This document shows positions 16,162-40,096 of a stretch of DNA of 64,000 bases, one piece after another. The notes below the pieces were generated by a model. That model worked only from the letters and a program-made list of their open reading frames with translations. It did no database searches and was not told the origin of the DNA. The stretch spans positions 234,834-298,833 of the IMG/VR virus record IMGVR_UViG_3300042350_004528; one strand, given 5' to 3'. The translations under genes and the position numbers were made by a program. How positions within the stretch are numbered: position 1 is the stretch's first letter; every line of letters starts with the position of its first letter.

Positions 16162-16743
16162 TTATTGATTAATGTTGAAGGCTCGATCATATGCCCCATC
16201 TAGTATAATCTTTTTATGGAGTTTCATTGTTATTTCAGCATCATATAAAGCATTATGTTGACCACCATTCTTATCCAAGCCAAGTATTAGGTGCCTATTT
16301 TTTTTAGGATCGTGATACCAAATCTTTAAAACTGTTGCCATATCATATGGTTGATATCCGTTAAAATTATTTGGTAATTTTCTGGACGGTTCTCCCATAA
16401 AATATAAATCCATGAATAAAACCCAATCAAAAGCTAAAGTATCACCCCAAAACTCAATATCCTTAAATTGTTTTAACCAAGTAACTAAAGCATCTGATAT
16501 TGTTTGTTTATCTTGTTTTATGGTGAAGGATTTATTCTCCTCGTCATTTTCAAAAAAATGAACGTATTCGGAATATGTGAGCTTGGGTATAACATTATCT
16601 TTAATCCATTGGTCACATTGTGATTCATCGTAGTCATTAAATTCAGCGTAAAATTTATGACCATTTTCTGTTATCATCCCTAAAGAAATGGGTGTGGTTG
16701 CTTTATGCAAACCAGTAAATTCAAAATCAAAAAATATTCTCAT
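16162..16743 (-). CDS. DEDDh 3'-5' exoribonuclease (Rv2179c-like), second copy
   Basis: FDFEFTG, WGDTLAFDW, QHNALYDA. Confidence 0.8.
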   Translation of the reverse strand: MRIFFDFEFTGLHKATTPISLGMITENGHKFYAEFNDYDESQCDQWIKDNVIPKLTYSEYVHFFENDEENKSFTIKQDKQTISDALVTWLKQFKDIEFWGDTLAFDWVLFMDLYFMGEPSRKLPNNFNGYQPYDMATVLKIWYHDPKKNRHLILGLDKNGGQHNALYDAEITMKLHKKIILDGAYDRAFNINQ

Positions 16744-17185: not shown

Positions 17186-17629
17186 TTAATCGATTATAGT
17201 TTCAATTGTATGGGGCACTACCCATCTAGCGCAGTCTTGGGGTAAGCGATGGATATGTTTATAGTTATTTATATAACCCATCATGTTTGCTGAACCGACA
17301 GCATTAGCTGAATGAACCATTACCTTACAAACAGGCGCACCATTCAACCACTGTTCAACTAACCATTTAGTGCAGTCCATACCAGTTTTTTCGGTGATGT
17401 TATCATAGTTCAATTGATAATTGTGATAAACATTTGTGTGCCATTCTTTCATCGCACTATCACCAAGATCATGATCAAGTGATATTAAATCAATATTCTC
17501 TAAACCAATTTCGGTTATTTTGGAAACAAACTCATCGTAGTCTCTGACAACAGTCCACTCGATTGTCATGTGTGTTGACGGGTTAGGTAAAGGCGTCCTA
17601 AGATCGTCTAAGTATATATTATATCTCAT
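17186..17629 (-). CDS. Cyclic-phosphate-processing receiver-like domain protein (cREC-like)
   Basis: YLDDLRTP, ISLDHDLG, TGMDCTKWL, VHSAN. Confidence 0.8.
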   Translation of the reverse strand: MRYNIYLDDLRTPLPNPSTHMTIEWTVVRDYDEFVSKITEIGLENIDLISLDHDLGDSAMKEWHTNVYHNYQLNYDNITEKTGMDCTKWLVEQWLNGAPVCKVMVHSANAVGSANMMGYINNYKHIHRLPQDCARWVVPHTIETIID

Positions 17630-18024
17630 AATTTTATCTCAAATCTATTTTTCATTATTTCTAATTTATCTTCTGGTACACCGTGTATGTTTTTACCACC
17701 ATGCCTATTTTCTACGATTAAAGATGTTACTTTGTAATCGTAGTATTTAGCTTTTTCGTAGTAGAAATCCATTTCCCATTCTTGGGTAAATGTGTTAGAT
17801 ACTATGATTATCGATGTATCGTTAGCCATAGCTTTTTCCGTTTGGATCATACACCAGTTGTGTGCCATTTTAATATCGGCTGGGTTAAACTTGTATTCTC
17901 CGTCCTTCATGAAATACATGTCAGCTTCAAAGTGAGCATATCCAGCACCCTTTGCACCGATTAAATCAGCGACTGTTGACTTACCACTTCCAGGCAATCC
18001 GCGTAATAATATTAAATCTTTCAT
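17626..18024 (-). CDS. P-loop kinase (AAA_33 / polynucleotide-kinase-like)
   Basis: RGLPGSGKST, EAD, VSNTFTQEWE, HGVPED. Confidence 0.85.
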   Translation of the reverse strand: MKDLILLRGLPGSGKSTVADLIGAKGAGYAHFEADMYFMKDGEYKFNPADIKMAHNWCMIQTEKAMANDTSIIIVSNTFTQEWEMDFYYEKAKYYDYKVTSLIVENRHGGKNIHGVPEDKLEIMKNRFEIKL

Positions 18025-19310: not shown

Positions 19311-19826
19311 TTATGAAAAAGTTAAAATTATATCCTTAACGGTATCATCGTTTGTGTGTGTCCTGGCCGTTAATAACTTATACTTCTCAAAAAATGGGTC
19401 GTACTCTGATGAAAAATATTGATATTTATTCAACTCGTCTATATTTTTCGCAAAATATTCATTGACCATAATTCTTTCACTTGATGTGGTCTGCATAAGC
19501 ATTATGTAAACCAAGAAACCATCATCAGTTGTTAAAAAAACAACGTTATTTTTAAAATTGATTGATATGAAATTTAAAAAATCGTCATTAATCATACCCG
19601 AATATTTGAATGGGCATAATTTATACAGAACACCCATCTGGCCAATCAATATCGGTTGTATTTCTTGATTAAAAGAATTGGTGATAAATATATTATCACC
19701 ATTTTCTTCAAGGATTTTTGCAAAAAAAATATCCTTGAACACATTCTTATTTAAGTCAATATAATACTTTATGATTTTGTTAAAAGCCTCATCAAAAAAT
19801 TTTGGATCTTTCATTTTAACCATCAA
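19311..19826 (-). CDS. Hypothetical protein
   Basis: 171-aa ORF. Confidence 0.5.
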   Translation of the reverse strand: MMVKMKDPKFFDEAFNKIIKYYIDLNKNVFKDIFFAKILEENGDNIFITNSFNQEIQPILIGQMGVLYKLCPFKYSGMINDDFLNFISINFKNNVVFLTTDDGFLVYIMLMQTTSSERIMVNEYFAKNIDELNKYQYFSSEYDPFFEKYKLLTARTHTNDDTVKDIILTFS

Positions 19827-20917
19827 CTTATCGCATATATTCTTTTTCTAAAACGAATTAACAAGTCGTCAACAAATTTTCTATCAACAGAATTAGGTAG
19901 ATCTGATTTTGCGTAAAGGTCATCCAAAAGTGTGATTTTTGATTCCGCTTCGGCAAGAAGATCCTCATATTCAGCATCACCATTTCTTATTTTAAGTAAT
20001 TCCTCAGCATCTGGTCTTTTGACGATCACTTGTTTAAGTTCGGCAATCTCGGTTGCCATACGTATCAACCTAATACAGTGCATCATATTTTTTGAATCAT
20101 AACCCTTACCATGTTCTTGGTTTGTGTTATATCGATCGTCATTACGCTTTTCAACCCAATCCCAGTATTCCTTATAATCTTTACAGTAAGAAGTATAACC
20201 ATCCTTGTTATAGATAATTGTCGCAACTGGCTTTTCGCCAAATGGAATGGAACTTAATCTAACCTCATTCGATGTGTCATCATCATTGACGATGCCACGA
20301 TAACCGAGCCTAGAATTTTCTTTACTGGCGTAATGATCATAAAACATGGCGTATACATCTCTGGCATGTGGTACATTAACCAAACCACATTTGTTCTGTA
20401 CATAACCACTATTGTCCAAAAATGCTTTGAGTGGGATCGATTTATAACCATCGACAACATAGCAAAAATCCAATATAGATTTGCGCTCTTTGTCAACTGG
20501 GTTTACAATTTTTTTGTTTAACCCGCGAGCTTTTTTAATTTGTGCGACAGCGTACCCACCAAATGAATCGCGGCAAACTTTACTGATGAACTTATCCTTA
20601 TGTTGTAGAATCATATCAAACATTGGGTGTTTGTAAAGTATATTCTCTTCGGGCATATTGAATAACTCAATTATGTTTGGGTTTTGCGATTGTAATAATT
20701 GCAAGAACCTACCAATCTCATAGTAGACAGCATCATTTGTGGCATCCGAAACTTGTTCAATATAGTCATATCCCAGTACGTTATCAAGCGGTAAGTAGTA
20801 AACTCCACGATAATCGGTATCGGATGTTGGTTTGTGTGTACCATACGCCCTTGATCCAGATATTGTTTCAAACAATAAAAGTCCATTCGTTCTTAAATAA
20901 TCTATCGTTAATCGCAT
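19823..20917 (-). CDS. Pol-beta superfamily nucleotidyltransferase (RlaP/YcgL-like)
   Basis: SGSRAYG...SDTDYRGVY, NPNIIE, YDSKNMMHCIRL. Confidence 0.85.
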   Translation of the reverse strand: MRLTIDYLRTNGLLLFETISGSRAYGTHKPTSDTDYRGVYYLPLDNVLGYDYIEQVSDATNDAVYYEIGRFLQLLQSQNPNIIELFNMPEENILYKHPMFDMILQHKDKFISKVCRDSFGGYAVAQIKKARGLNKKIVNPVDKERKSILDFCYVVDGYKSIPLKAFLDNSGYVQNKCGLVNVPHARDVYAMFYDHYASKENSRLGYRGIVNDDDTSNEVRLSSIPFGEKPVATIIYNKDGYTSYCKDYKEYWDWVEKRNDDRYNTNQEHGKGYDSKNMMHCIRLIRMATEIAELKQVIVKRPDAEELLKIRNGDAEYEDLLAEAESKITLLDDLYAKSDLPNSVDRKFVDDLLIRFRKRIYAIS

Positions 20918-23906: not shown

Positions 23907-23978
23907 AGTGAATATTTTTTTTACAAATATAAATATAATCCAAAAAAATTCCATACCTTTGCGTGATATTTATGTAAA

Positions 23979-26063
23979 ATGGCACAAAAAGTATCATATA
24001 CAGGGGTTTTCTTGGACAAGGATTCAAGAGCCGTATTAGAAAAAGAGTTCAAATCGCAGGTTCCTGATGGATGGGAGTGGATTGCGCATCATATGACCAT
24101 AACTTTAGGGGAAATGGTTGATAAATCGGAATTGGGTAAACAAGTTGCCCTTAATATAGTTTCATTTGGTAAAGATGATAAAGTCATGGCAATTGGTGTC
24201 AAGGGTTACCCTAGTAAAAATGAAAAACCGCACATTACTTTAGCCGTTAATCGCGCTGAGGGTGGTAAACCTTATATGAGTAATTTAATTAAGGAATGGG
24301 TACCATACTCGATCGGTGCCATATTAACTGGTGTTGTCAGTGAATACCCGCCACAATCTAAAGAAACACTTAATGAAGCTTATGATATTAAATCATTACC
24401 GTTCTATAACGATGTTATCAATAAAAACGGTAAAATATATCAGGTTGGTGGGGCTGTTAGAGATTTGTATCTGGGTAAACAATCTAAAGACCTTGACATC
24501 GTTATTAGTGGAATACCAGCTAAGGAACTCGAAGATGTGTTGAAAAAATATGGTAAAGTTGATATGGTTGGTGCGTCATTTGGTGTTATTAAGTTCACAC
24601 CACCAGATGGTGAAGAAATTGATATTGCAATACCAAGAACTGAAAAGAAGAGTGGTGTTGGTTATCAGGGTTTTGATGTGTCGGCTGATCACACTCTCCC
24701 TATCGAAAAGGATCTTGAGAGAAGAGATTTCACAATAAATTCAATCGCTAAAGATAGTGATGGGAATGTTATTGATCCATTCGGTGGGTTAAAGGATCTT
24801 GATTCGAAGGTTATCAAATTAACAAACCCTAAGGCTTTTTCAGATGACCCATTAAGGATGTTAAGGGCGATTCAATTTGCGTCTAGGTTTGGTTTTAAAA
24901 TAGATGAGGAAACGTTTGATGCTATTAAAAAGAATGCGATGACTATTGACGAAATATCAAAAGAGAGAATATTGATAGAGTTTGATAAAATCGTAAACAA
25001 AGGTAATCCCAGAGTCGGAGCTGAGTTATTAGTTTCAAGTGGATTGTACAGGGGCATATTCGGTACCGAGTTTGATGGTGATTTTGAACCGTTTGACCAA
25101 GTAACTAGGAACAGTGAGTTCGCTTACTGGTTGATCCAATCGTTCACCGAACAACCAGACCAATACTATAAGAATATAATGAAAGGTGACATCGATACGG
25201 CTAGAGAGATATCAGCTTTGGCTTATATGTATAACAACTTACCTGGTAACGACAAAGCAAAACAAAGATTTGTTTATTTTAATATAAATAAGATATCACC
25301 ACAGATGTTTAATAGTAATTTCGTGAGAAGTATATTGAGTGATGTTATCAATGACTTTGATTCTCAAAAATACCCAGCTGGTTATTCGGATTTAAAAGTC
25401 AATGGTAATGATTTAATGGCAATGGGTTTAAAAGGTAAAGCTGTTGGTGATATGTTAAATAAATTAATCTCTGCAATATATTCTGATAAAATTGAAAATA
25501 CAAAGAATGGTTTGTTGGGTTTTGTTGAGAGGAATAAGGATATGTTAAATGAATCTGTTGGTGGTACAAATAAGAATAGAGTTGTGTTTTATGATTTTGA
25601 TGGTACTTTAATGGATAGTCCACTTCCTGACACAGGTAAACAAATCTATAAAGAAAAAACTGGTAATGTATACCCACATCAAGGTTGGTGGGGTCGTGCT
25701 GAGAGTTTGGATTTAAATGTCTTCGACATAAAAACAAATCCAGATGTTGAGGCTAAATTTAGAGCTGACTCATCGGATCCAAATACGCATGTTGTTTTAT
25801 TAACCAATAGGTTGTCAAAACTTGAGGAACCAATTAAAAAAGTTCTTGACAAACATAATATGGTATTCGATTTTTATTCTTTTAAAAATGATGGTCGTGA
25901 AAAGGGTGAACGTGTTTTGGATATTTTAGCCAAAGTATATCCGAATACGAATGAAATTGAATTTTATGATGACGATGAGCGACACATTCAAAATGTAAGA
26001 GATAATTTAATCGACACCGATTACGATTTCAAGGTGAATCAAGTTATTGATGGTAGATTATAA
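23979..26063 (+). CDS. Three-domain RNA end-repair protein: 2H phosphoesterase + CCA-adding/poly(A)-pol-type nucleotidyltransferase + HAD phosphatase
   Basis: HHMT and PHIT (2H); VGGAVRD...DLDIV, RRDFTINS, DDPLRMLRA (class II NTase); FYDFDGTL...LLTNR...FYDD (HAD). Confidence 0.85.
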   Translation: MAQKVSYTGVFLDKDSRAVLEKEFKSQVPDGWEWIAHHMTITLGEMVDKSELGKQVALNIVSFGKDDKVMAIGVKGYPSKNEKPHITLAVNRAEGGKPYMSNLIKEWVPYSIGAILTGVVSEYPPQSKETLNEAYDIKSLPFYNDVINKNGKIYQVGGAVRDLYLGKQSKDLDIVISGIPAKELEDVLKKYGKVDMVGASFGVIKFTPPDGEEIDIAIPRTEKKSGVGYQGFDVSADHTLPIEKDLERRDFTINSIAKDSDGNVIDPFGGLKDLDSKVIKLTNPKAFSDDPLRMLRAIQFASRFGFKIDEETFDAIKKNAMTIDEISKERILIEFDKIVNKGNPRVGAELLVSSGLYRGIFGTEFDGDFEPFDQVTRNSEFAYWLIQSFTEQPDQYYKNIMKGDIDTAREISALAYMYNNLPGNDKAKQRFVYFNINKISPQMFNSNFVRSILSDVINDFDSQKYPAGYSDLKVNGNDLMAMGLKGKAVGDMLNKLISAIYSDKIENTKNGLLGFVERNKDMLNESVGGTNKNRVVFYDFDGTLMDSPLPDTGKQIYKEKTGNVYPHQGWWGRAESLDLNVFDIKTNPDVEAKFRADSSDPNTHVVLLTNRLSKLEEPIKKVLDKHNMVFDFYSFKNDGREKGERVLDILAKVYPNTNEIEFYDDDERHIQNVRDNLIDTDYDFKVNQVIDGRL

Positions 26064-26120
26064 AAAAAGCCGAGAATATTCTCGGCTCTTTATTTTTAGA
26101 TCTGAATCTATCTATCGAAA

Positions 26121-28078: not shown

Positions 28079-28138
28079 ACTTCTTTATTTTATTATAAAT
28101 AGTATGAGATAAATAAAAGTAATAAAAAATTAGATTTG

Positions 28139-28209
28139 AGCTGGTAGTTGGAATCGAACCAATCTCTATAAGTTTTGCAGACTTATTGCACTCCATGTAC
28201 ATTACCAGC
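28139..28209 (-). tRNA. tRNA-Cys(GCA)
   Basis: TAAGT-CTGCAAA-ACTTA, U73. Confidence 0.85.
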
Positions 28210-28216
28210 ATATTAG

Positions 28217-28287
28217 CACGGGTGGAAGGATTCGAACCTCCATCGCTGGTTTTGGAGACCAGCATTCTACCATTGAAATACACCCGT
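28217..28287 (-). tRNA. tRNA-Trp(CCA)
   Basis: CTGGT-CTCCAAA-ACCAG. Confidence 0.9.
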
Positions 28288-28293
28288 ATATTG

Positions 28294-28363
28294 TGGACAC
28301 AGTGGGAATCGAACCCAAACGATCTCCTTGCAAGGGAGTCGACCTGCCTTCGGTATCTGGCCC
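28294..28363 (-). tRNA. tRNA-Ala(TGC), atypical
   Basis: CTCC-CTTGCAA-GGAG, G3:U70 kept, irregular acceptor and D arm. Confidence 0.7.
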
Positions 28364-28366
28364 ATA

Positions 28367-28453
28367 TGGCGGAGAGCGGAGTACTCGAAACTCATACCCG
28401 AAAGTACCACTCGCTTAGCAGGCGGTGACAGCACCCTGGCTGTGTCACTCTCC
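28367..28453 (-). tRNA. tRNA-Ser(GCT), atypical, CCA encoded
   Basis: CGC-CTGCTAA-GCG, long variable arm, G73, 5-bp D-stem. Confidence 0.75.
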
Positions 28454-28458
28454 ATTTG

Positions 28459-28534
28459 TCGGGAAAGCTGGATTCGAACCAGCGATCTCTCGCGTCCAAG
28501 GCGAGCGAGGATGACCTGACTCCTCCATTTCCCG
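28459..28534 (-). tRNA. tRNA-Pro(TGG)
   Basis: CTCGC-CTTGGAC-GCGAG, C1-G72, A73. Confidence 0.9.
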
Positions 28535-28539
28535 TTTTG

Positions 28540-28612
28540 TAGGGTAGACAGGGTTCGAACCTGCGACCCCGTGCTCCCAAAGCACGTGCGCTACCAACTG
28601 CGCTACTACCCT
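28540..28612 (-). tRNA. tRNA-Pro(TGG), second copy
   Basis: CGTGC-TTTGGGA-GCACG, A1-U72. Confidence 0.9.
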
Positions 28613-28619
28613 ATGTTTG

Positions 28620-28705
28620 TCGGAGTGGAGGGATTCGAACCCCCTGAGTTTCCAATGTGCCAGATTTACAGTCTGGTGCCCATCCGCCGTCTGAGCAGCA
28701 CTCCG
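28620..28705 (-). tRNA. tRNA-Tyr(GTA)
   Basis: CCAGA-CTGTAAA-TCTGG, long variable arm, C1-G72. Confidence 0.9.
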
Positions 28706-28720
28706 AAATGATATAAAACA

Positions 28721-28752
28721 AAAAACCCTGAGATTTTGTCCCAGGGCTTCTA
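28721..28752 (-). terminator. Intrinsic terminator of attenuator A
   Basis: CCCTGGGA-CAAAA-TCTCAGGG followed by a U tract; its 5' arm (TAGAAGCCCTG) is complementary to 28801-28811 in the leader ORF. Confidence 0.85.
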
Positions 28753-28785
28753 CTATTTTATATAATTAGTTTCCAAAAAAAATCG

Positions 28786-28884
28786 TTAACTAAAAGACAA
28801 TAGAAGCCCTGTTCCAGCTGGATATGCTGGAGCTGCTGGACAACTATACGGCCATGCCACGATATTTTTGTTCAAATTTTTCAT
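28786..28884 (-). CDS. Leader peptide A (32 aa) MKNLNKNIVAWPYSCPAAPAYPAGTGLLLSFS
   Basis: Hand translated; codons 10-23 are all Ala/Trp/Pro/Tyr/Ser(AGT)/Cys, the species in the downstream array. Confidence 0.8.
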   Translation of the reverse strand: MKNLNKNIVAWPYSCPAAPAYPAGTGLLLSFS

Positions 28885-28985
28885 TTTGTCTTTATAAATA
28901 GTGTGTTCTTTTAAAAAGTGATACAAATATAAGCACAGTTTTTTAAATAAGCAAGTTTTTTTAAAAATTAATCATAAATTTCTGT

Positions 28986-29029
28986 TATATCGGTCATGTG
29001 ATACAAATATATCGGTCATGTGATACAAA
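28986..29029. repeat. 22-bp tandem duplication
   Basis: TATATCGGTCATGTGATACAAA x2. Confidence 0.9.
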
Positions 29030-29051
29030 CCAGGCGCTTACCACTCACAAT

Positions 29052-29129
29052 TGGGGCGAACGATGAGGTTCGAACTCACGACCTCCTGAACCACAATCAG
29101 GCGCTCTAACCAACTGAGCTACGTCCGCC
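29052..29129 (-). tRNA. tRNA-His(GTG) with encoded G-1, C73 and CCA
   Basis: CCTGA-TTGTGGT-TCAGG. Confidence 0.92.
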
Positions 29130-29139
29130 ATGTAATCCC

Positions 29140-29982
29140 CTACCTGTTGGTGGGGATTAAGTTATTTAAATATTCTCTATTTTGAGTAAAGATTGGTGTT
29201 TCGACATCCAATTCCCAAGCGCTTCTGGTGTAAACATCCTTTGGATCAATCACAACCGTATCACGATTGACTTCCGCATTGGCACTTTTACGAACAAACG
29301 TCTTTTCAATTTTTCTGATTATACCACCACGTTTTTCTCTTGGTGAGTAATCATTCCAATTTGTACCAGCCTGAAATATCAATTCTTGCATACCATCGGT
29401 CTTAACCCCATGTAATTGTTTTGGTGAGTATAAACTCTGAGCGACCGATGAAATTGAATTTCTGGTCGCATCTTGTTGTCTCCAGATGAAATAATTCTCA
29501 ACCTCAACTTTTTGTGGGATTTGAAATACCCTGGCATCAAACATAGCCAATTTAGGTTCGCTGGCGTATCTTTTATCCGTCACAGACTTTCTCTCGATAA
29601 CATGTAGATTCTTAATATAACGATCCATTCTCAATTTATTAAAGATGGCTGTTGCCATTGAGGCTGAAACGCTCGCCATTTTCTGTAAGTTATTATCGAA
29701 CCAAGCTTGTGTGCCCTCATCTTCAAAATCGGTGATCAAAATTGAAATCTCATCTGATTGCACATACGCAAACTTAGCACCCATAATGTTTTTACATAGA
29801 TATGCCGCTGTCTCATCCATATCATCAATCAAATCCAAATCAAATGGCCTTCTCAAACCTTTTGTATAGGTGTGAAAAGCCTTACCATCAATTCTGATAA
29901 TGGTGTAACCTCTTCTTGGTAATGAAATACGAGTTCTATCCTCATAGTTCGATTTCATTCTGTCTCCTAATGCGTCTTTCAT
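29140..29982 (-). CDS. thg1: Thg1-like tRNA(His) guanylyltransferase / 3'-5' polymerase
   Basis: RIDGKAFHTYT, YVQSDEIS, FDARVF, WRQQDATRNSIS. Confidence 0.92.
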   Translation of the reverse strand: MKDALGDRMKSNYEDRTRISLPRRGYTIIRIDGKAFHTYTKGLRRPFDLDLIDDMDETAAYLCKNIMGAKFAYVQSDEISILITDFEDEGTQAWFDNNLQKMASVSASMATAIFNKLRMDRYIKNLHVIERKSVTDKRYASEPKLAMFDARVFQIPQKVEVENYFIWRQQDATRNSISSVAQSLYSPKQLHGVKTDGMQELIFQAGTNWNDYSPREKRGGIIRKIEKTFVRKSANAEVNRDTVVIDPKDVYTRSAWELDVETPIFTQNREYLNNLIPTNR

Positions 29983-30413
29983 TTTATTTCTTGGTTAATT
30001 TTATATTCTTCTTCTGTTGCTATTCTAATTGGTACGAACAGCGCATACCCATCATCATCCTCAAAATGGTTACAATCGTCTTCATAAGTCATATTAAACT
30101 TAGTTCGATTGTAGATGAACTTGTTTTGTTTGACATCCCATTTTGCTATGGTGGCTCTCCTATGATCACCCGCATAAAACTGACCGTCAACCAAATTTTT
30201 TTTCTGAATAGCCCCAGCGCCAATTAATTTTGGTACATAAAAGTTATTCCACTCATCAGTTTCAACTCGTGGTAATTCGGGTATATCATTAACACCAGCG
30301 AATGGTTTTAATGTCTCCCAATATTCACGAATACGTTGTTCCCTTTCAGCTTTTTCAATTTCTCGTTTAGCTTTCAGTTCAGCGAATATCATATCTTTAT
30401 CAATCTGTTCCAT
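29979..30413 (-). CDS. Hypothetical protein
   Basis: 144-aa ORF. Confidence 0.6.
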
Positions 30414-30427
30414 AACAAATCATTTTG

Positions 30428-30512
30428 CGGAGAGGGAGGGATTCGAACCCCCGTTACCTTTCGGTAAAACGGTTTTCAAGACCGCCGCGATCAACCGCTC
30501 TGCCACCTCTCC
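30428..30512 (-). tRNA. tRNA-Ser(TGA)
   Basis: GCGGT-CTTGAAA-ACCGT, long variable arm, G73. Confidence 0.92.
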
Positions 30513-30561
30513 AATATTTCACAAATATAAGAATAAAAATGTTAATTAACAAGTTTATTTT

Positions 30562-30638
30562 TGGTAGGCATGGTAGGACTCGAACCTACGACCTTCTGCG
30601 TATCAGACAGACGCTCTAACCAACTGAGCTACATGCCT
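30562..30638 (-). tRNA. tRNA-Ile(GAT), CCA encoded
   Basis: TCTGT-CTGATAC-GCAGA. Confidence 0.92.
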
Positions 30639-30645
30639 ATATTTG

Positions 30646-30719
30646 TACACCCTGATGGATTCGAACCACCGACCCCCTGCATGTAAGGCAGGTGCTCTAA
30701 CCAACTGAGCTAAGGATGC
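30646..30719 (-). tRNA. tRNA-Val(TAC)
   Basis: CCTGC-CTTACAT-GCAGG. Confidence 0.92.
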
Positions 30720-30725
30720 AAATTG

Positions 30726-30799
30726 TGACCCCATCGGGACTCGAACCCGAAACCTTCGCATTAAAAGTGCGAAGCTCTAACCAATTGAGCTACGAGGTC
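30726..30799 (-). tRNA. tRNA-Lys(TTT)
   Basis: TCGCA-CTTTTAA-TGCGA. Confidence 0.92.
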
Positions 30800-30808
30800 A
30801 TATAAAAC

Positions 30809-30837
30809 AAAAAACCCAGGTGGTTTACCTGGGTTTT
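30809..30837 (-). terminator. Intrinsic terminator of attenuator B
   Basis: AAAACCCAGGT-AAACC-ACCTGGGTTTT + U tract; AACCCAG is complementary to CTGGGTT in leader B (30885-30891). Confidence 0.85.
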
Positions 30838-30862
30838 CTTTTCTAACTCTATGTTCTTTAGT

Positions 30863-30949
30863 TTAACATAAATTAGGCAATACTAACCCAGCCCAGTTTT
30901 TCACCGAGATATGTTTAATTGACTTAATAATGTTAACCATTGTGTTCAT
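30863..30949 (-). CDS. Leader peptide B (28 aa) MNTMVNIIKSIKHISVKNWAGLVLPNLC
   Basis: Codons 5-17 dominated by Val/Ile/Lys/Ser(TCN)/His, matching downstream tRNAs. Confidence 0.75.
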   Translation of the reverse strand: MNTMVNIIKSIKHISVKNWAGLVLPNLC

Positions 30950-31022
30950 TTTACTGATTTTTAAATATATAGTGCAAAAGTAAGCAAAGTTTTTTAAATA
31001 TGCAAGTTTTTTCAAAAAAAAA

Positions 31023-31415
31023 TTAAAAAATTTCTCTTTTACCTCTAGATACTGGCTCCAAACCTTTATTTCTGTCAATATAGATCCAGTCATATTCAAC
31101 CAAACCGAACTCATTGAGATGGTCTAATACGGTCTCAATACTATATTCTTTACATGAATAAATGTCAAATTGAACCAAACTTGGTGTATTTGCATCCCAA
31201 ATATGAATCGCAGCATGTGAGGTTGCAAGGGTTATTGTCCCAGTAATACCCTCATTACCTGGCTCGTCAACATAAATGGACGTTGGGCCAGCAACGACAA
31301 CCATACCAACTTTATTTACCAACGAGGTTAACCATGCGTCTAAAACCTCTTCCTTCTTTGGTGGATTTAAAACGTATCCACGGACGATTAAATGCAAGTG
31401 ATTTGGATTGAACAT
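31023..31415 (-). CDS. speD: S-adenosylmethionine decarboxylase proenzyme-like
   Basis: HLHLI, GITG...LATSHAAIHIW, DIYSC. Confidence 0.8.
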   Translation of the reverse strand: MFNPNHLHLIVRGYVLNPPKKEEVLDAWLTSLVNKVGMVVVAGPTSIYVDEPGNEGITGTITLATSHAAIHIWDANTPSLVQFDIYSCKEYSIETVLDHLNEFGLVEYDWIYIDRNKGLEPVSRGKREIF

Positions 31416-31479
31416 TTTCTATAATATTTACTGAAATAAATATTAAGAATTAGCGTTAAAAACAAAAAAACCGAATTAT

Positions 31480-31863
31480 TTATTCGGTTTTTGCGTTATT
31501 TTTGAATTTTGGTTTTAATGATTTTTTATCAATTTCCATTGTAAAATGGTATCGTAATAAATCATCATCCGTATAATCACCTGACGATGAAAAATTTAAA
31601 GACTTAATGTCAAAACTAAAACCACCGATGATTTCACCAGTGGGGTCAAGGTATTCTAATTCAATTCTCGATAAATTAAATAAATCGGTTGGAATAATAT
31701 GGTCATTAACTGTTTCATAACAAGATGTTTCAAACATTAATCTATCACCATCATTATATAGTTTATATTTTGAAAATAAGTAGGGGTGAATCTCAACACC
31801 AACCGTTTTAATTAACCAGCGATTTGTTTTTTTCGGTTCAATTGGGAATTTTTCGATATTCAT
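31480..31863 (-). CDS. Hypothetical protein, possible short tail-tube (gp19-like) paralog
   Basis: EPKKTNRW and LEYLDPTG resemble tail-tube motifs recalled from related phages. Confidence 0.4.
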   Translation of the reverse strand: MNIEKFPIEPKKTNRWLIKTVGVEIHPYLFSKYKLYNDGDRLMFETSCYETVNDHIIPTDLFNLSRIELEYLDPTGEIIGGFSFDIKSLNFSSSGDYTDDDLLRYHFTMEIDKKSLKPKFKNNAKTE

Positions 31864-31884
31864 GATTAAATTTTATTTTTTTTA

Positions 31885-33537
31885 TTATAAACTGTAAATT
31901 CCAAAAGGCGTAATTAAATAATCAATGATTTTATTTTTTAAATGAGTCATAGCTTCTTCGGGACGATTTACTATTGGCTCGTTATGAACATTAAATGAAG
32001 TATTTACCAAACAACCAAAACCTGTTTGATTTTTATAAGATTTCAAAATATGATAAAATAATGGATTTGAATTTTTAGTTACAATTTGAATACGTGCCGT
32101 TTTGTCCACAGGATGGACAACAGTTGGTAACTTATCTTTCCATTCATCTCGTGTTTCAAAACATAATGTCATAAACTCAGCGGCATATCTAGATTTATTC
32201 ACTATAAACAATCGATTAGCATCCTCATCTATTACTGCTGGCGCAAAAGGCATAAAATCGTTACGTTGTAACTTATCATTAATTAATTTATAAGTTTCGG
32301 GGTGAGTGGCGTCACAAATAATACTTCTATTACCTAAAGCTCTAGGGCCGTGTTCAAATTTGCCCTGAAATAATCCTAATATTTTTTTATTAAGTAATAA
32401 AACAGTAATAAAATCTATATTAAAAGGAATATAATTATATGTTCCTAAAATATTTTTTGCCGCTTCATCTACGTGTTCTTTATCATACTCATTCCCAAAA
32501 AACACATTATTTAATCTAAAAGGTTTAAAATCAGGATGAAGTTGTTTAATCGTTCCTAAAACACACCCTAAAGCTAACCCCTCATCACCCATTGGGGGGG
32601 CTATAAATACTTCATCCACCCATTCTAGTTCATTAATTAATTTATTCATTTTTACATTAGCAAAAATACCTCCAGCCATTGCCACTTTTTTAACATGAGG
32701 ATATTTTTGATGTAAATTATTAAGTATTTTTAAGATTTTTTCCTCAAATACTTTCTGTCCAGTATAAGCAATGTTTTTAATAGTTTCATGATTCTTCCAA
32801 TATCGAGAACCCATTGATTTAAAAAAGTTTTGATAAGTTTTTAAAAAAACATTTCCCCCAGCTAAATCACTATCATCAGAAAAAGGTGAAATTTCTGTTT
32901 GAAGACCATCAATTTTAATAACTTCGTTAAAAGCATCATATATTTCAGGTATTAGTCCTCCATGCCCAGCCATACCCACTACTTTACCTTCATCTTTTAA
33001 TCTTTTAAATCCTATTAATTCTGTAATAGCGGCATAAAATAGTCCTAAAGAATCTCTATTTAATAAAATCCCATCGATATACTCTAAATTACCATTTTTA
33101 CCTAAATAATACTTAGCTGAATGATTTTCTCCTGAACCATCAATAGCCACAACTAATGTATCTTCTTGAAAGTTAGATAAGTAATATGCTGTATTAATAT
33201 GAGAATCGTGGTGTTCGATTTTAATATATTTTTCTTTTTCTAAATTAAAATTAATGGTCATTTTAAAAATATCTCTGATTATTTCGTAATCGTAAAAACT
33301 AGTGAAATAATTTACTTTTCCTAAATCTACATCATGTTTAACTATTAATTCAGTAAGAGAAGCTAAAGGATATCTAAAATAATTATTTTCAAAATCTTTA
33401 TAAGGTTTAATCCTATTTAATCTTTCTTCCTCTAAGACTACTTTTAAATCGCCATTTTCAAAATAAGCTAACCCACAGCTGTGAGAACCACCAATAATTC
33501 CTAATATTCGATAGGAAGAATTTTCGTACAATTTCAT
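31885..33537 (-). CDS. Carbamoyltransferase (NodU/CmcH family)
   Basis: EEERLNRIK, EHHDSH, DGSGE, EGKVVGMAG, GGIFANVK, GDEGLALG, EHGPRALGNRSI, FMPFAP, NTSFNVHNEPIV. Confidence 0.92.
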   Translation of the reverse strand: MKLYENSSYRILGIIGGSHSCGLAYFENGDLKVVLEEERLNRIKPYKDFENNYFRYPLASLTELIVKHDVDLGKVNYFTSFYDYEIIRDIFKMTINFNLEKEKYIKIEHHDSHINTAYYLSNFQEDTLVVAIDGSGENHSAKYYLGKNGNLEYIDGILLNRDSLGLFYAAITELIGFKRLKDEGKVVGMAGHGGLIPEIYDAFNEVIKIDGLQTEISPFSDDSDLAGGNVFLKTYQNFFKSMGSRYWKNHETIKNIAYTGQKVFEEKILKILNNLHQKYPHVKKVAMAGGIFANVKMNKLINELEWVDEVFIAPPMGDEGLALGCVLGTIKQLHPDFKPFRLNNVFFGNEYDKEHVDEAAKNILGTYNYIPFNIDFITVLLLNKKILGLFQGKFEHGPRALGNRSIICDATHPETYKLINDKLQRNDFMPFAPAVIDEDANRLFIVNKSRYAAEFMTLCFETRDEWKDKLPTVVHPVDKTARIQIVTKNSNPLFYHILKSYKNQTGFGCLVNTSFNVHNEPIVNRPEEAMTHLKNKIIDYLITPFGIYSL

Positions 33538-33539
33538 AA

Positions 33540-34220
33540 TTAATCTAATTCTTTTATAATTTCTTTTTTATTAAAATCATATTTCCACCAAGAATTTTCA
33601 CCAGGTGTAGAAATGTATGACACATGAGTCATGTGCGCTTTTTTTACACACATTTGTTTATATTTATTTTGGTTTGTAATTCTGTTAGACCATTGAGCGT
33701 CAGTTGACGCGAGATATTGGGTGATGCCTTGAATATCGTTAGCGGCAATAGTGTGATAAGGGTGTTCTAACCAAATGTGTCTCCTAATTCCAGTAAAAAA
33801 CCAACCAGTAAACGACACTTCAAATTCATCTGGTAGGGCATCCATTTCATATGTTTTAAAAAATTTATTATATTTTTCCATCAAAGGAAGTTGCCCTCCC
33901 TGACAATGTATCCATTGTTTGCCTTGAGAATGAATTGTTGCTAAATAACTATTTTGCCTAACACACGACCACCCTGTAACTATTTCGTGTCTATGTAACG
34001 CTTCTTCTAAATAGGCAAAATTTTCAGGACTAATAATAACATCATCAGAAACAATAAAATAATTATCATAATTTGTTTCTTCAATGAAGGAAGGAATATG
34101 TGTATTGAGTTCATATTCCCTAAACCCCTTAAACCAAACTTTAGGGACTTTTAATTTTGAGATGGCGTGTTTTATGATTTCTTCATCTCTAACACTCATT
34201 ATCATTAAACAATTTTTCAT
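33540..34220 (-). CDS. Putative glycosyltransferase (GT-A-like)
   Basis: SDD motif, position in the sugar island. Confidence 0.5.
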   Translation of the reverse strand: MKNCLMIMSVRDEEIIKHAISKLKVPKVWFKGFREYELNTHIPSFIEETNYDNYFIVSDDVIISPENFAYLEEALHRHEIVTGWSCVRQNSYLATIHSQGKQWIHCQGGQLPLMEKYNKFFKTYEMDALPDEFEVSFTGWFFTGIRRHIWLEHPYHTIAANDIQGITQYLASTDAQWSNRITNQNKYKQMCVKKAHMTHVSYISTPGENSWWKYDFNKKEIIKELD

Positions 34221-34900
34221 AATTTATTCGAAAAAAATCCTAAAATATCTTCAATAATTTCTAAAGAATTTTTATTAACAATTCCATCTGGGTTATAAAA
34301 ATAATCGGGAACGCTCTCCGTACCAAATTTTCCCACATTATACCCAGCATAAAATTGATTGAAATCACTACCCCAAGGTAAATAAGCTGTAACCCAATCA
34401 TATTTTTTTGTTTCGTGCAGATAACCATTAATGATAGAAATGTTACAATTATGTTCTTTTCTAAATCTATCTATTACGCACATCCAAACGTGAAGCTCTT
34501 CTGGGTTTTCACTGTGTAACGTAAAATTAACTAATTTATATCTTAAATCTAGCTTGTCTTCAAGTAAGATCTCTCTAGTATGTGGATTAAGAATTTTAAC
34601 CTCATAAGGGACAAATCCTTTATAAAACCACCTTAAATACGAATGATTTGGTATATTGGCGGCTTCCCAAAGAATTTTAAAATCTTCTGAATTTATTATT
34701 TCCTCTTCAATTGACTTTGAACCTGAGGCGTTGTAATTGTACTTTAATTTTTTTACAACTTTGGTTTTTTCAATAGATATTTCTACACGAAATTCATTAA
34801 GTTTATTATCATCATCGTGTACATGAACACATAAACCATCTCGGTAATCTACCATAAATCTATAATTCATATTTTTGTTTTTAAAATTTATTTTATCCAA
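34217..34900 (-). CDS. Hypothetical protein (sugar island)
   Basis: 227-aa ORF. Confidence 0.55.
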   Translation of the reverse strand: MDKINFKNKNMNYRFMVDYRDGLCVHVHDDDNKLNEFRVEISIEKTKVVKKLKYNYNASGSKSIEEEIINSEDFKILWEAANIPNHSYLRWFYKGFVPYEVKILNPHTREILLEDKLDLRYKLVNFTLHSENPEELHVWMCVIDRFRKEHNCNISIINGYLHETKKYDWVTAYLPWGSDFNQFYAGYNVGKFGTESVPDYFYNPDGIVNKNSLEIIEDILGFFSNKL

Positions 34901-35618
34901 AGCAACTCATTGTGCTATAATTTTTCATTTCAAATATATAATTAACCCTAATATCCGAAGGATCCATTTCAATAGTCCTGTTCGTATTACAAGCCATGGC
35001 AATAGCGGACGTTGCTGTTAAATTACCTAAAAAATGGTCACAAGAAGCTATTGCTGTTGTCATATCTTTTAATAAAGGTAAATATAGCATAGGTATTTTA
35101 TTAAAAAAAGGAGAAGTTGTATATTGTTCGATATATGAACAAACAAAGTAAGCTTTATCTTTCCAATATTCAATGTAATTTAAATAATATTGAATAGTAT
35201 CTAAATGCGGTAAAGGTTTAAAATTTCTATTTATTAATAATAAGTCTTTGAATGCGCTGTCTTTTTTAACCTCTAACCAAGAATAATTAAAAGGTATTTC
35301 AATGTTTGGGTTAATATAATTGCGGAGGTACAATTCATTCCACGATGCTGTGAACAAATTTGGGTCGGTTCTAAATCTGGTGAGATCAATATCTATTTCT
35401 TGGTTCGCCCAAATTTCAAAGTTATTAACATAAGATTGATTTGATACTATGGGGGATAATTCATTAAAACTATTTTCTACCCCCGAAGCAAATACTTCAT
35501 GGTCGTGATTACAAATATATATGTTAAATTTTTCCCCTGTGGTTTCAAAAAGATATTTGGGTAAAATTAAAGCGTGAATAAAATCACCTAGTTTTCCACC
35601 AATTAATATATTTCTCAT
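34893..35618 (-). CDS. Putative GT9/heptosyltransferase-like protein
   Basis: GGKLGDFIH, IASCDHFLGNLT. Confidence 0.55.
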   Translation of the reverse strand: MRNILIGGKLGDFIHALILPKYLFETTGEKFNIYICNHDHEVFASGVENSFNELSPIVSNQSYVNNFEIWANQEIDIDLTRFRTDPNLFTASWNELYLRNYINPNIEIPFNYSWLEVKKDSAFKDLLLINRNFKPLPHLDTIQYYLNYIEYWKDKAYFVCSYIEQYTTSPFFNKIPMLYLPLLKDMTTAIASCDHFLGNLTATSAIAMACNTNRTIEMDPSDIRVNYIFEMKNYSTMSCFG

Positions 35619-35869
35619 TTTTTACCGTACATTTTAGTTGCACCTTGTTTATATAATTTTTGTTGTTTTCCAGTTGCCACCATTTCATTAATACTTTCAT
35701 CAATTTCTTGTATTAAATCTGTTCGATATGTGTTAGCAACATTTGTAACTCGAGTAGCATCTGCTATTTGTTTATCGGAGGCATTGGGATCACGTTTAAT
35801 GTCTTCGGCCATCCAAATACGAATATTAGCTATTGTAAGTTTGTCAATTAAATTTCCTATTGTTTCCAT
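35615..35869 (-). CDS. Small helical protein (DUF4254-like)
   Basis: TIGNLIDKLTI...R...IQEID. Confidence 0.6.
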   Translation of the reverse strand: METIGNLIDKLTIANIRIWMAEDIKRDPNASDKQIADATRVTNVANTYRTDLIQEIDESINEMVATGKQQKLYKQGATKMYGKK

Positions 35870-35872
35870 AGT

Positions 35873-36496: not shown

Positions 36497-36497
36497 A

Positions 36498-37721: not shown

Positions 37722-37780
37722 TTTTTTTATAAATTTTGTATAACTTAAAATTAAGTTAAAATAATTGATAAGTAAAGTAT

Positions 37781-38248: not shown

Positions 38249-38251
38249 ATT

Positions 38252-38701: not shown

Positions 38702-38776
38702 GCGACAATAGTAATAAAAAATGTGGATAAAACAAATAAAAAAAGGGTAAAATATTTTACCCTTTTTAAATTTCTG

Positions 38777-40091: not shown

Positions 40092-40096
40092 ATTTG

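What the first reader, a model, noticed from the sequence alone, without database searches (positions are those of the whole stretch)
23979..26063. 2H-phosphoesterase / CCA-adding / HAD-phosphatase triple fusion: a one-protein tRNA 3'-end rescue enzyme
Seen: two HxT motifs, a class II nucleotidyltransferase and a DxDxT HAD domain. Established: 2H enzymes open 2',3'-cyclic phosphates, HADs remove 3'-phosphates, and CCA enzymes need a 3'-OH; in E. coli, ANKZF1-type or RelE-like CCA-end cleavage is repaired by such sequential steps. Inference: it recycles tRNAs whose 3' ends were cut by host toxins and matures the 24 CCA-less phage tRNAs. It is one of few plus-strand genes and has a TATTTAT motif.
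Basis: partly seen in the sequence, partly recalled or inferred. Interest (0 to 1): 0.78.

Follow-up and report, generated by a model that had tools for sequence, protein, structure and literature searches.

The report
Phage tRNA tail heal-and-rebuild enzyme
A giant freshwater phage encodes one protein that joins a cyclic-phosphate opener, a CCA-adding enzyme and a phosphatase, so it probably cleans and rebuilds damaged or unfinished tRNA 3' tails; the logic is known from E. coli, but this domain combination is not found in any cultured phage searched here.

Summary
Window 23979..26063 (+) is one 694-aa ORF with three domains.

- **Residues 1-130:** a compact 2H phosphoesterase (H38-M-T40, H85-I-T87). 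Its model is closest to CNPase and the cyclic-phosphodiesterase domain of fungal and plant tRNA ligase.
- **Residues 147-520:** a complete class II CCA-type nucleotidyltransferase with motifs A-E.
- **Residues 526-694:** a HAD phosphatase (D539-F-D541-G-T543, T609, K642, D664-D665). It passes the Pfam cut-off for HAD_SAK_1 and folds like the T4 Pnkp and Pnkp1 phosphatases.

The catalytic residues are near-invariant in every relative fetched. The three modules recur in metagenomic jumbo phages in many orders. In an 80%-identical relative, the 2H part is a separate gene 10 nt upstream.

The genome has 27 tRNA genes, and 23 lack an encoded CCA. The window also encodes an RNA ligase, a kinase, cREC, RlaP, Thg1 and an exoribonuclease.

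The best reading is a tRNA 3'-end heal-and-rebuild enzyme, functionally like E. coli Cca (nucleotidyltransferase plus HD domain). No activity was tested.

- 2H enzymes of this branch leave a 2'-phosphate, not a 3'-phosphate.
- The ANKZF1 route is eukaryotic, not an E. coli pathway.
- TATTTAT is no more frequent than chance.

Verdict: new variant of a known kind, interest about 0.6.

The parts
23979..26063 (+). Whole ORF, 694 aa: 2H - CCA nucleotidyltransferase - HAD fusion (stop codon 26061-26063)
23979..24374 (+). N-terminal compact 2H phosphoesterase domain (aa 1-132), CNPase / tRNA-ligase-CPD branch
   Evidence: AF2 pLDDT 90.2. VIA-align Z 12.1 to the CNPase catalytic domain, 10.1 to fungal Trl1 KIN-CPD, 7.4 to Acb1. 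Top AFDB Swiss-Prot hits are the CPD domains of S. pombe and Arabidopsis tRNA ligase. Pfam tRNA_lig_CPD reaches only 18 bits, below its cut-off of 23.
24090..24098 (+). First HxT motif: H38-M39-T40
   Evidence: H38 kept in 196 of 197 relatives
24231..24239 (+). Second HxT motif: H85-I86-T87
   Evidence: H85 kept in 197 of 197 relatives
24417..25538 (+). Class II CCA-type tRNA nucleotidyltransferase (aa 147-520): head, neck, body and tail. Motif A G157-G-A-V-R-D162 with D171-L-D173; motif B R248-R-D250; motif D D289-D-P-L-R293; motif E E329-R ... E334 ... K337.
25554..26060 (+). C-terminal HAD phosphatase domain (aa 526-694), HAD_SAK_1 family. Motif I D539-F-D541-G-T543 (nt 25593-25607), motif II T609, motif III K642, motif IV D664-D665.
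   Evidence: Pfam 32.4 bits against a cut-off of 25.6. AF2 pLDDT 94.7. Foldseek hits: a pneumococcal HAD hydrolase first, then Pnkp1 (4xrp, 4xru) and the T4 Pnkp phosphatase (5uj0, 2ia5). Residue conservation.
26068..26097 (+). Terminator-like palindromic hairpin (8 pairs) followed by a T run, between the convergent stop codons at 26063 and 26121
23907..23978 (.). Divergent intergenic region upstream of the ORF, similar in relative L004 (5527-5600). A promoter function is not shown.
28138..45861 (-). 26 of the phage's 27 tRNA genes (the 27th is at 3232-3306). 23 of the 27 carry C74 but no CCA; 16 read CAA at positions 74-76. These are the likely routine substrates.
13268..14650 (-). RNA ligase (PF09414 plus the PHA02142 OB domain), part of the same RNA-repair toolkit
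17186..18024 (-). cREC (cyclic-phosphate-processing receiver domain, 17186-17629) and a P-loop AAA_33 kinase (17626-18024), overlapping genes
16162..16743 (-). Rv2179c-like 3'-5' exoribonuclease, a possible trimmer of tRNA 3' trailers (inference)
19823..20917 (-). RlaP, the RNA-ligase-associated Pol-beta nucleotidyltransferase
29140..29982 (-). Thg1-like 3'-5' nucleotidyltransferase. Its stop codon lies 10 nt before G-1 of tRNA-His (29052-29128).

Best explanation
The gene encodes a trifunctional enzyme that heals and rebuilds tRNA 3' ends.

The central class II nucleotidyltransferase adds C75 and A76, or the whole CCA, to tRNAs that end at N73 or C74. This is needed routinely for 23 of the phage's 27 tRNAs, whose genes carry C74 but not CCA.

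The two flanking domains prepare ends that the transferase cannot extend:
- The N-terminal CNPase/Trl1-CPD-like 2H domain opens a 2',3'-cyclic phosphate, left by a metal-independent RNase or by spontaneous transesterification, to give 3'-OH/2'-PO4.
- The C-terminal Pnkp-like HAD phosphatase removes the remaining 2'-phosphate, or a 3'-phosphate.

The product is a clean 2',3'-diol that the transferase can rebuild. The protein therefore does with 2H plus HAD what E. coli Cca does with its HD domain.

Shown here: domain identities, folds, conservation of catalytic residues, recurrent co-occurrence of the three modules, and the CCA-less tRNA genes.

Inferred: the substrate (tRNA tails), the order of steps, CCA specificity, and any role against host tRNA-tail nucleases.
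For: - **Domains and motifs:**
- **Folds:** 2H model pLDDT 90, Z 12.1 to CNPase over 123 of 125 residues and 10.1 to the Trl1 CPD. HAD model pLDDT 94.7, with the Pnkp1 and T4 Pnkp phosphatases among the top five Foldseek hits.
- **Catalytic residues across the family:** H38 in 196 of 197, H85 in 197 of 197, nucleotidyltransferase D171 and D173 in every aligned sequence, HAD D539 and D541 in 67 of 67.
- **Module shuffling among 255 fetched proteins:** 2H-CCA-HAD 35, CCA-2H 43, CCA-HAD 28, 2H-CCA 10, 2H-HAD 3, CCA-2H-HAD 2.
- **Split gene in a relative:** in L004 (80% identical) the 2H domain is a separate 129-aa gene ending 10 nt before the CCA-HAD gene. The pair sits in the same + strand island with the same neighbours.
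- **CCA type rather than CC-adding or poly(A):** the loop between the RTE motif and motif B has the same length as in the Planococcus CCA-adding enzyme. CCA models score 182 bits against 110 for PcnB.
- **Substrates:** 23 of 27 tRNA genes lack CCA.
- **Toolkit in the same window:** RNA ligase, kinase, cREC, RlaP, Thg1 and an exoribonuclease.
- **Precedents:** the E. coli Cca HD domain removes 2',3'-cyclic phosphate (PMC6961547). The Trl1 CPD gives 3'-OH/2'-PO4 (PMC6379707 abstract). Cas12a3 cleaves tRNA CCA tails as anti-phage immunity (PMC12851939).
Against: - No activity has been measured.
- RNA-library contigs cover only the downstream gene (26103-26500), so transcription of this gene is not shown.
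- The 2H domain misses the Pfam cut-off for tRNA_lig_CPD (18 bits against 23), and the nucleotidyltransferase misses the NCBIfam equivalog cut-off (182 against 290).
- About half of the fetched 2H-module relatives are stand-alone proteins. Others sit in giant polyvalent proteins beside Acb1-like 2H, GNAT and ART domains. The module may therefore have other substrates.
- The one documented immune nuclease that cuts tRNA tails, Cas12a3, uses a RuvC site. By my own inference such a site leaves a 3'-OH, and that end would need neither the 2H nor the HAD domain.
- The host's own CCA-adding enzyme might already mature the phage tRNAs.
- The inter-domain geometry was not modelled.
Confidence: 0.6

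Rival explanations
1. The protein is polyvalent with independent jobs. The nucleotidyltransferase simply matures phage tRNAs. The 2H and HAD domains degrade small-molecule nucleotides, such as 2',3'-cNMPs or immune signalling nucleotides, rather than RNA ends.
For: - Relatives place the same CCA module in 1-2.3 kaa polyvalent proteins with Acb1-like 2H, GNAT and ART-PolyVal domains.
- About half of the fetched 2H-module relatives are stand-alone ~125-135 aa proteins.
- Iyer et al. 2017 proposed that the 2H domains of polyvalent proteins counter nucleotide signalling (PMC5512222).
Against: - The target's 2H is structurally much nearer to CNPase and the Trl1 CPD (Z 12.1 and 10.1) than to Acb1 (Z 7.4). 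It gives no Pfam Acb1 hit.
- In relatives with two 2H domains, the Acb1-like one is a different module.
- The HAD is of the SAK/Pnkp RNA-end type.
- The CPD-like 2H, the CCA module and HAD_SAK_1 co-occur in every pairwise combination.
Confidence: 0.18
2. The 2H and HAD domains are the 3'-end healing arm of the phage's ligase pathway. They clean broken anticodon loops for the separately encoded kinase and RNA ligase. Fusion to the CCA enzyme reflects shared tRNA binding or co-regulation, not repair of tRNA tails. This reading does not exclude the best explanation.
For: - The phage's P-loop kinase (17626-18024) has no phosphatase domain of its own, unlike T4 Pnkp.
- The only HAD_SAK/Pnkp-like phosphatase in the genome is the one in this protein.
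- An RNA ligase and RlaP are present.
- The 2H's nearest relatives are the CPD domains of tRNA ligases.
Against: - A cREC gene, predicted to process cyclic phosphates, overlaps the kinase gene and could serve that pathway (PMC7824862).
- In the fetched relatives, the 2H and HAD modules are fused to the CCA enzyme and not to ligase or kinase.
- Iyer et al. 2017 found that the 2H domains of polyvalent proteins and their solo counterparts never associate with RNA ligases (PMC5512222).
Confidence: 0.17
3. The nucleotidyltransferase is not a CCA-adding enzyme. It would be a poly(A) polymerase or another tailing enzyme, for example one that marks host RNA for decay.
For: - The Pfam family is shared with bacterial poly(A) polymerases, and the PDB hits include poly(A) polymerases at about 1e-22.
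- The NCBIfam CCA equivalog cut-off is not reached.
- From my own knowledge, sequence alone separates the two activities poorly.
Against: - CCA models score higher and cover the full length: PRK13299 at 182 bits over 17-394 of 396, against PcnB at 110 bits over the head and neck only.
- The best PDB hits are bona fide CCA-adding enzymes.
- After motif A the segment reads G-A-S-F-G-V-I-K-F. It lacks the two adjacent arginines that, from memory, mark the bacterial poly(A) polymerase signature.
- The genome encodes 23 tRNAs that need CCA.
Confidence: 0.05

Closest known systems
E. coli multifunctional CCA addition/repair protein (Cca: class II nucleotidyltransferase plus C-terminal HD domain)
   Same: One polypeptide joins CCA addition to the removal of 2',3'-cyclic phosphate and phosphate from tRNA 3' ends (PMC6961547, citing Yakunin et al. 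2004). The head and neck are homologous (PRK10885, 1.7e-45 over positions 2-202).
   Different: There is no HD domain, and the E. coli-type model stops matching at position 202 of 409. Healing is assigned to two unrelated folds, 2H at the N terminus and HAD at the C terminus. The body and tail are of the Bacillus type (PRK13299).
Fungal and plant tRNA ligase Trl1 (ligase - kinase - CPD), and vertebrate CNPase
   Same: The N-terminal domain shares the fold and the two HxT motifs of the CPD/CNPase branch of the 2H superfamily (Z 10-12). That branch opens RNA 2',3'-cyclic phosphate to 3'-OH/2'-PO4.
   Different: The phage domain is a compact ~125-aa version, against ~200 aa. It misses the Pfam cut-off. 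It is fused to a CCA enzyme and a phosphatase, not to a kinase and ligase.
Phage T4 Pnkp and bacterial Pnkp1 (kinase plus HAD 3'-phosphatase)
   Same: The C-terminal domain has the DxDxT HAD fold and matches these RNA-end phosphatases structurally. It belongs to the related HAD_SAK_1 family.
   Different: It is not fused to a kinase; the phage's kinase is a separate 132-aa gene next to cREC. The partner is a CCA-adding enzyme.
Eukaryotic ANKZF1/Vms1 - ELAC1 - TRNT1 tRNA recycling
   Same: The order of events is the same: a tRNA cut at the CCA end with a 2',3'-cyclic phosphate is de-phosphorylated and then given a new CCA (PMC10275265).
   Different: That pathway uses three separate eukaryotic proteins, and ELAC1 is a metallo-beta-lactamase RNase Z homologue.
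Jumbo-phage RNA-repair components catalogued by Iyer et al. 2021 (PMC7824862)
   Same: That survey lists 2H phosphoesterases, Swiss-army-knife HAD phosphatases and CCA-adding enzymes in jumbo phages and assigns them these same roles.
   Different: The text I read treats them as separate proteins and says the SAK HAD 'tends to occur as a standalone domain'. I did not find the fused architecture described there. Burroughs & Aravind 2016 could not be read.

Membership tests
Class II CCA-adding tRNA nucleotidyltransferase | Head domain with motif A (GGxVRD ... DxD carboxylates) | tested here: met
   PF01743 at 1.2e-24. G157-G-A-V-R-D162 and D171-L-D173 are invariant.
Class II CCA-adding tRNA nucleotidyltransferase | Motifs B-E (RRD; DPxxG; [ED]DxxR nucleotide template; ERxxxExxK) | tested here: met
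   R248-R-D250, D266-P ... G270, D289-D-P-L-R293, E329-R ... E334 ... K337.
Class II CCA-adding tRNA nucleotidyltransferase | Full-length flexible loop between the RTE motif and motif B (deleted in CC-adding enzymes; this criterion is from my own knowledge) | tested here: met
   Aligns to the Planococcus CCA-adding enzyme 6ibp with only a 2-residue difference in this segment.
Class II CCA-adding tRNA nucleotidyltransferase | Score above the curated NCBIfam equivalog cut-off | tested here: not met
   PRK13299 scores 182.1 bits against a cut-off of 290. This is a divergent member, not a strict equivalog.
Class II CCA-adding tRNA nucleotidyltransferase | Adds exactly C-C-A to tRNA | not testable with these tools
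   Needs an enzyme assay.
2H phosphoesterase superfamily, CNPase / tRNA-ligase CPD branch | Two H-x-T/S motifs on the central strands of a two-lobed fold | tested here: met
   H38-M-T40 on strand 38-43 and H85-I-T87 on strand 85-90 of the model. Z 12.1 and rmsd 2.3 A to CNPase.
2H phosphoesterase superfamily, CNPase / tRNA-ligase CPD branch | Pfam PF08302 gathering score | tested here: not met
   18 bits against a cut-off of 23. Membership rests on fold and motifs.
HAD phosphatase, HAD_SAK_1 (PF10307) | HAD motifs I-IV and the family gathering score | tested here: met
   DxDxT 539-543, T609, K642, D664-D665. 32.4 bits against a cut-off of 25.6. HAD fold at pLDDT 94.7.
E. coli-type Cca (nucleotidyltransferase plus HD) | C-terminal HD phosphohydrolase domain | tested here: not met
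   No HD family among the Pfam hits at E up to 1. PRK10885 matches only positions 2-202 of 409.
Acb1 anti-CBASS 2H nuclease (PF23474) | Match to the Acb1 family model, with Acb1 as the nearest fold | tested here: not met
   No PF23474 hit for the target. Acb1 reaches Z 7.4 against 12.1 for CNPase.
Bacterial poly(A) polymerase PcnB | Score above the PcnB model cut-off and above the CCA models | tested here: not met
   TIGR01942 scores 109.7 bits against a cut-off of 305.65, lower than the CCA models.
T4-type Pnkp | P-loop polynucleotide kinase fused to the HAD phosphatase | tested here: not met
   No kinase domain in the protein. The kinase is a separate gene at 17626-18024.
Swiss Army Knife (SAK) RNA-repair proteins (Burroughs & Aravind 2016) | SAK-type domains (HAD_SAK_1/2, 2H-SAK) in one multi-domain repair protein | tested here: inconclusive
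   HAD_SAK_1 is met. 2H-SAK (PF22547) was not among the Pfam hits. The defining paper was not available.

The most novel reading that the evidence does not exclude
The 2H-CCA-HAD family, together with its shuffled relatives, is a dedicated phage counter-defence against immune systems that disable translation by cutting off tRNA 3' tails. Such systems include Cas12a3-type nucleases and as yet undescribed metal-independent tail RNases of Bacteroidota-like hosts. The family would be the 'yet unknown means of resistance' that the Cas12a3 paper asks for. The compact CPD-like 2H module, with more than 2,000 cluster representatives and no Pfam model that reaches its cut-off, would mark such systems.
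Probability: 0.25. Interest if true: 0.8.

Novelty: new variant of a known kind. Interest (0 to 1): 0.6.

Why it matters
Phage tRNAs are now seen as a way round host nucleases that cut anticodon loops. An attack on the universal CCA tail cannot be escaped by variant tRNAs. [quoted passage not shown]

An enzyme that both cleans and rebuilds tRNA tails is an obvious candidate. It is directly testable in laboratory strains.

The family also shows that the E. coli solution, CCA-adding enzyme plus HD domain, has been reinvented with two unrelated healing folds. It further defines a large, compact 2H module that current family libraries barely recognise. As a reagent, a single enzyme that turns cyclic-phosphate, 2'-phosphate or 3'-phosphate tRNA ends into CCA-OH ends could be useful for tRNA sequencing.

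Tried and rejected
- **Megablast against GenBank phages:** no match. tblastn found no phage record covering more than 55% of the protein. The 2H part has only 2 weak hits, and the HAD part hits only 4 uncultured ~600-kb phages.
- **Sequence profiles of the 2H and HAD parts against PDB sequences:** nothing significant, with Pnkp1 at E 0.22. Fold comparison was needed.
- **Complex prediction of the protein with phage tRNA-Val:** the job was not folded by the tool, so it gives no evidence either way.
- **Reads from four RNA libraries:** three metatranscriptome libraries cover only 26103-26500, the downstream - strand gene. The fourth, probably DNA, covers 24634-25138. Transcription of the target is not shown.
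- **TATTTAT as a promoter signal:** rejected as evidence, 42 matches against 46.7 expected. Sigma-70-like sites are also at chance level.
- **Neighbouring genes as an operon context:** rejected. The flanks are small unknown ORFs, Collar-domain proteins and endolysins.
- **RtcB:** absent. The Rnl1 search was uninformative because its controls were silent.
- **Burroughs & Aravind 2016 (PMC5062991):** could not be read. I cannot exclude that the architecture is listed there.
- **Acb1-like reading of the target's 2H domain:** considered and rejected on fold ranking and family scores.
Full report
**1. Observation**

Window 23979..26063 (+) is a single 694-aa ORF that starts at the first ATG after a stop. 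It is the only long + strand ORF in a run of - strand genes. The other convincing + strand genes in the window are at 46605..48415. GC skew flips to +0.25 over the ORF.

The window is the last 64 kb of a 298,833-bp IMG/VR virus record that CheckV rates complete.

The ORF is real rather than an assembly artefact:
- The identical protein is recorded on 5 contigs.
- 16 lake or freshwater DNA runs hold at least 97% of its sampled words.
- 35 of the fetched proteins share the architecture. The 21 that I aligned are 43-78% identical to it.

**2. Domains**

Pfam gives these matches:

| Family | Residues | E-value or score |
|---|---|---|
| PolyA_pol head | 153-279 | 1.2e-24 |
| PolyA_pol_RNAbd | 305-361 | 2.5e-15 |
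| tRNA_NucTran2_2 | 470-516 | just under cut-off |
| HAD_SAK_1 | 566-681 | 32.4 bits, cut-off 25.6 |
| tRNA_lig_CPD | 27-108 | 18 bits, cut-off 23 |

The best NCBIfam model is the Bacillus-type CCA tRNA nucleotidyltransferase PRK13299. It matches at 1.7e-53 and covers positions 17-394 of 396. The E. coli-type model matches only the head and neck, and PcnB scores lower. The best PDB sequence hits are bona fide CCA-adding enzymes, 6ibp and 1miv.

In an alignment of 22 full-length proteins the following are invariant:
- H38-M-T40 and H85-x-T87.
- G157-G-x-V-R-D162, D171-L-D173, R248-R-D250, D290-P-L-R293, and E329-R ... E334 ... K337.
- D539-F-D541, T609, and D664-D665.

T543 and K642 are nearly invariant.

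- H38 in 196 of 197, and H85 in 197 of 197.
- Nucleotidyltransferase D171 and D173 in all aligned sequences.
- HAD D539 and D541 in 67 of 67.

**3. Folds**

The N-terminal 132 residues model at pLDDT 90.2.
- Foldseek returns 2H enzymes throughout its top 50, but at marginal E-values.
- VIA-align gives Z 12.1 and rmsd 2.3 A over 123 residues to the CNPase catalytic domain.
- It gives Z 10.1 to the CPD domain of fungal Trl1, 7.4 to Acb1 and 6.6 to LigT.
- In Swiss-Prot AlphaFold models, the top hits are the CPD domains of S. pombe and Arabidopsis tRNA ligase.

The domain is therefore a compact (~125 aa) member of the CNPase/CPD branch, not an Acb1-type enzyme.

The C-terminal 169 residues model at pLDDT 94.7. 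They match HAD phosphatases. The top hit is a pneumococcal HAD hydrolase, and Pnkp1 of the Pnkp1/Rnl/Hen1 repair complex and the T4 Pnkp 3'-phosphatase fill ranks 2 to 5.

**4. Family context**

A profile of the 2H module finds 2,209 cluster representatives at E up to 0.001, and 1,202 at 1e-10 or better. Many are stand-alone ~125-135-aa proteins. Many others sit at the C terminus of 1-2.3 kaa proteins. Those large proteins carry the same CCA module, a second Acb1/LigT-like 2H domain, and GNAT or ART-PolyVal domains.

I built HMMs for the three modules and scanned all 255 fetched proteins:

| Architecture | Count |
|---|---|
| 2H alone | 105 |
| CCA-2H | 43 |
| 2H-CCA-HAD | 35 |
| CCA-HAD | 28 |
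| CCA alone | 28 |
| 2H-CCA | 10 |
| 2H-HAD | 3 |
| CCA-2H-HAD | 2 |
| 2H-CCA-CCA-HAD | 1 |

This sample is biased by how the proteins were fetched. Even so, every pairwise combination of the three modules occurs, and in different orders. That is the classic signature of modules that work on the same substrate.

In relative L004, whose protein P0014 is 80% identical, the 2H domain is a separate 129-aa gene. It ends 10 nt before the ATG of a 565-aa CCA-HAD gene. The linker PPQSKETLNEA of the window protein is replaced there by a stop and a new start. The pair sits in the same + strand island with the same neighbours: RlaP upstream, and Collar and endolysin genes downstream. Another relative, L006, keeps the fused form.

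No cultured phage in GenBank carries the fusion. The HAD module hits only four uncultured ~600-kb phages, and the 2H module has only two weak hits.

**5. Substrates and toolkit**

All 27 tRNA genes of the genome lie in the window. I located the 7-bp acceptor stems and read positions 74-76:

| Positions 74-76 | Genes |
|---|---|
| CAA | 16 |
| CCA (His, Ile-GAU, Gly-UCC, one Met) | 4 |
| CTA | 3 |
| CAT, CTT, CGA, CAG | 1 each |

So 23 genes encode C74 but not CCA and need a CCA-adding activity. Eleven tRNAs are only 4-7 nt from the next tRNA.

The window also encodes the following, all on the - strand:
- RNA ligase, 13268-14650.
- Rv2179c-like 3'-5' exoribonuclease, 16162-16743.
- cREC, 17186-17629, overlapping a P-loop kinase, 17626-18024.
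- RlaP, 19823-20917.
- Thg1, 29140-29982, whose stop lies 10 nt before G-1 of tRNA-His.

RtcB is absent. The HAD of this protein is the only Pnkp/SAK-type phosphatase found in the genome.

**6. Mechanism**

The nucleotidyltransferase has every class II motif. Its loop before motif B has the same length as in a characterised CCA-adding enzyme. I therefore read it as CCA-adding with about 0.8 confidence.

Enzymes of the CNPase/Trl1-CPD branch open 2',3'-cyclic phosphate to 3'-OH/2'-PO4 (PMC6379707 and PMC10946426 abstracts; PMC9503650). The HAD must then remove a 2'-phosphate, and could also remove 3'-phosphates. I recall that the T4 Pnkp phosphatase can act on 2'-, 3'- and cyclic phosphates, but I did not check this.

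The net result is a clean diol that the transferase can extend. This is the combination of activities described for E. coli Cca and its HD domain (PMC6961547, citing Yakunin et al. 2004).

The eukaryotic ANKZF1 - ELAC1 - TRNT1 route follows the same order with separate proteins (PMC10275265).

A real immune attack on tRNA tails now exists. Cas12a3, with one orthologue from a Bacteroidetes bacterium, cuts off CCA tails. Its authors state that viruses would need unknown means of resistance (PMC12851939). Cas12a3 uses a RuvC site, and I infer that it leaves a 3'-OH. Against it the transferase alone would suffice. The 2H and HAD domains imply ends made by metal-independent RNases or by spontaneous cleavage.

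**7. Host and ecology (inference)**

The phage is common in lake and freshwater metagenomes. Its GC content is 34%. Only 2.8% of 215 long ORFs have a Shine-Dalgarno-like motif upstream, against a 4.1% background, and the leaders are A-rich. This pattern suggests a Bacteroidota-like host but does not prove one.

**8.
- The count of CCA-less tRNAs is 23, not 24.
- The step after the 2H reaction removes a 2'-phosphate, not only a 3'-phosphate.
- The E. coli ANKZF1/RelE precedent is not real.
- TATTTAT is at chance frequency.

A terminator-like palindrome at 26068-26087 follows the stop codon.

**9. Verdict**

The architecture is confirmed and the repair logic is well supported by comparative evidence. 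No activity, substrate or attacker has been shown.

In the literature I could read, the components are described separately for jumbo phages (PMC7824862) and the fusion is not mentioned. The key 2016 survey could not be read.

I rate it a new variant of a known kind, with interest 0.6.

Noticed in passing
window 3232-3306 and 28138-45861 (- strand): All 27 tRNA genes carry C at position 74. 16 read CAA at 74-76, one base away from CCA, and only 4 encode CCA. Eleven tRNAs are 4-7 nt from the next tRNA, so trailers of about 4-7 nt must be trimmed before CCA addition. The uniform C-A-A trailer may be a processing signal.
   Followed up: partly
window 13268-20917 and 29140-29982 (- strand): An RNA-repair toolkit is spread over about 17 kb: RNA ligase with a PHA02142 OB domain, an Rv2179c-like exoribonuclease, cREC overlapping a phosphatase-less P-loop kinase, RlaP and Thg1.
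   Followed up: partly
window 29052-29142 (- strand): The Thg1 stop codon lies 10 nt before G-1 of tRNA-His. G-1 is encoded in the genome and this tRNA also encodes CCA. The pair looks co-transcribed. Since G-1 is already encoded, Thg1 may serve repair rather than maturation.
   Followed up: partly
L004:5601-7698 (relative of the target): In an 80%-identical relative, the 2H domain is a separate 129-aa gene ending 10 nt before the CCA-HAD gene. This is a recent fusion or fission exactly at the inter-domain linker.
   Followed up: yes
proteins P0122-P0255 (relatives of window 23979-24374): The compact CPD-like 2H module has 2,209 cluster representatives at E up to 0.001, yet no Pfam model matched it above its cut-off. 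It often ends 1-2.3 kaa polyvalent proteins that also carry the CCA module, an Acb1-like 2H, GNAT and ART-PolyVal domains.
   Followed up: partly
window 15368-16159 (- strand): An ORF combines the dATP/dGTP diphosphohydrolase N-terminal domain (PF18909, 6.7e-28) with a weak NT5C-like HAD match. It may manipulate the dNTP pool, perhaps in connection with DNA base modification.
   Followed up: no
window 26103-26500 (gene 26121-26729, - strand): Contigs from three metatranscriptome libraries (estuary, freshwater, river) match this downstream phrog_3000/endolysin-like gene at 99% or more, and none matches the target gene. DNA carry-over in those libraries is not excluded.
   Followed up: no
whole genome G000: Shine-Dalgarno-like motifs are no more frequent upstream of long ORFs than in the genome background (2.8% against 4.1%), and the leaders are A-rich. 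GC content is 34%, and the phage recurs in many lake metagenomes. This suggests a Bacteroidota-like host.
   Followed up: partly
window 12374-12970 (- strand): A phage-encoded ClpP-family protease (4.9e-23) lies next to the RNA ligase gene.
   Followed up: no
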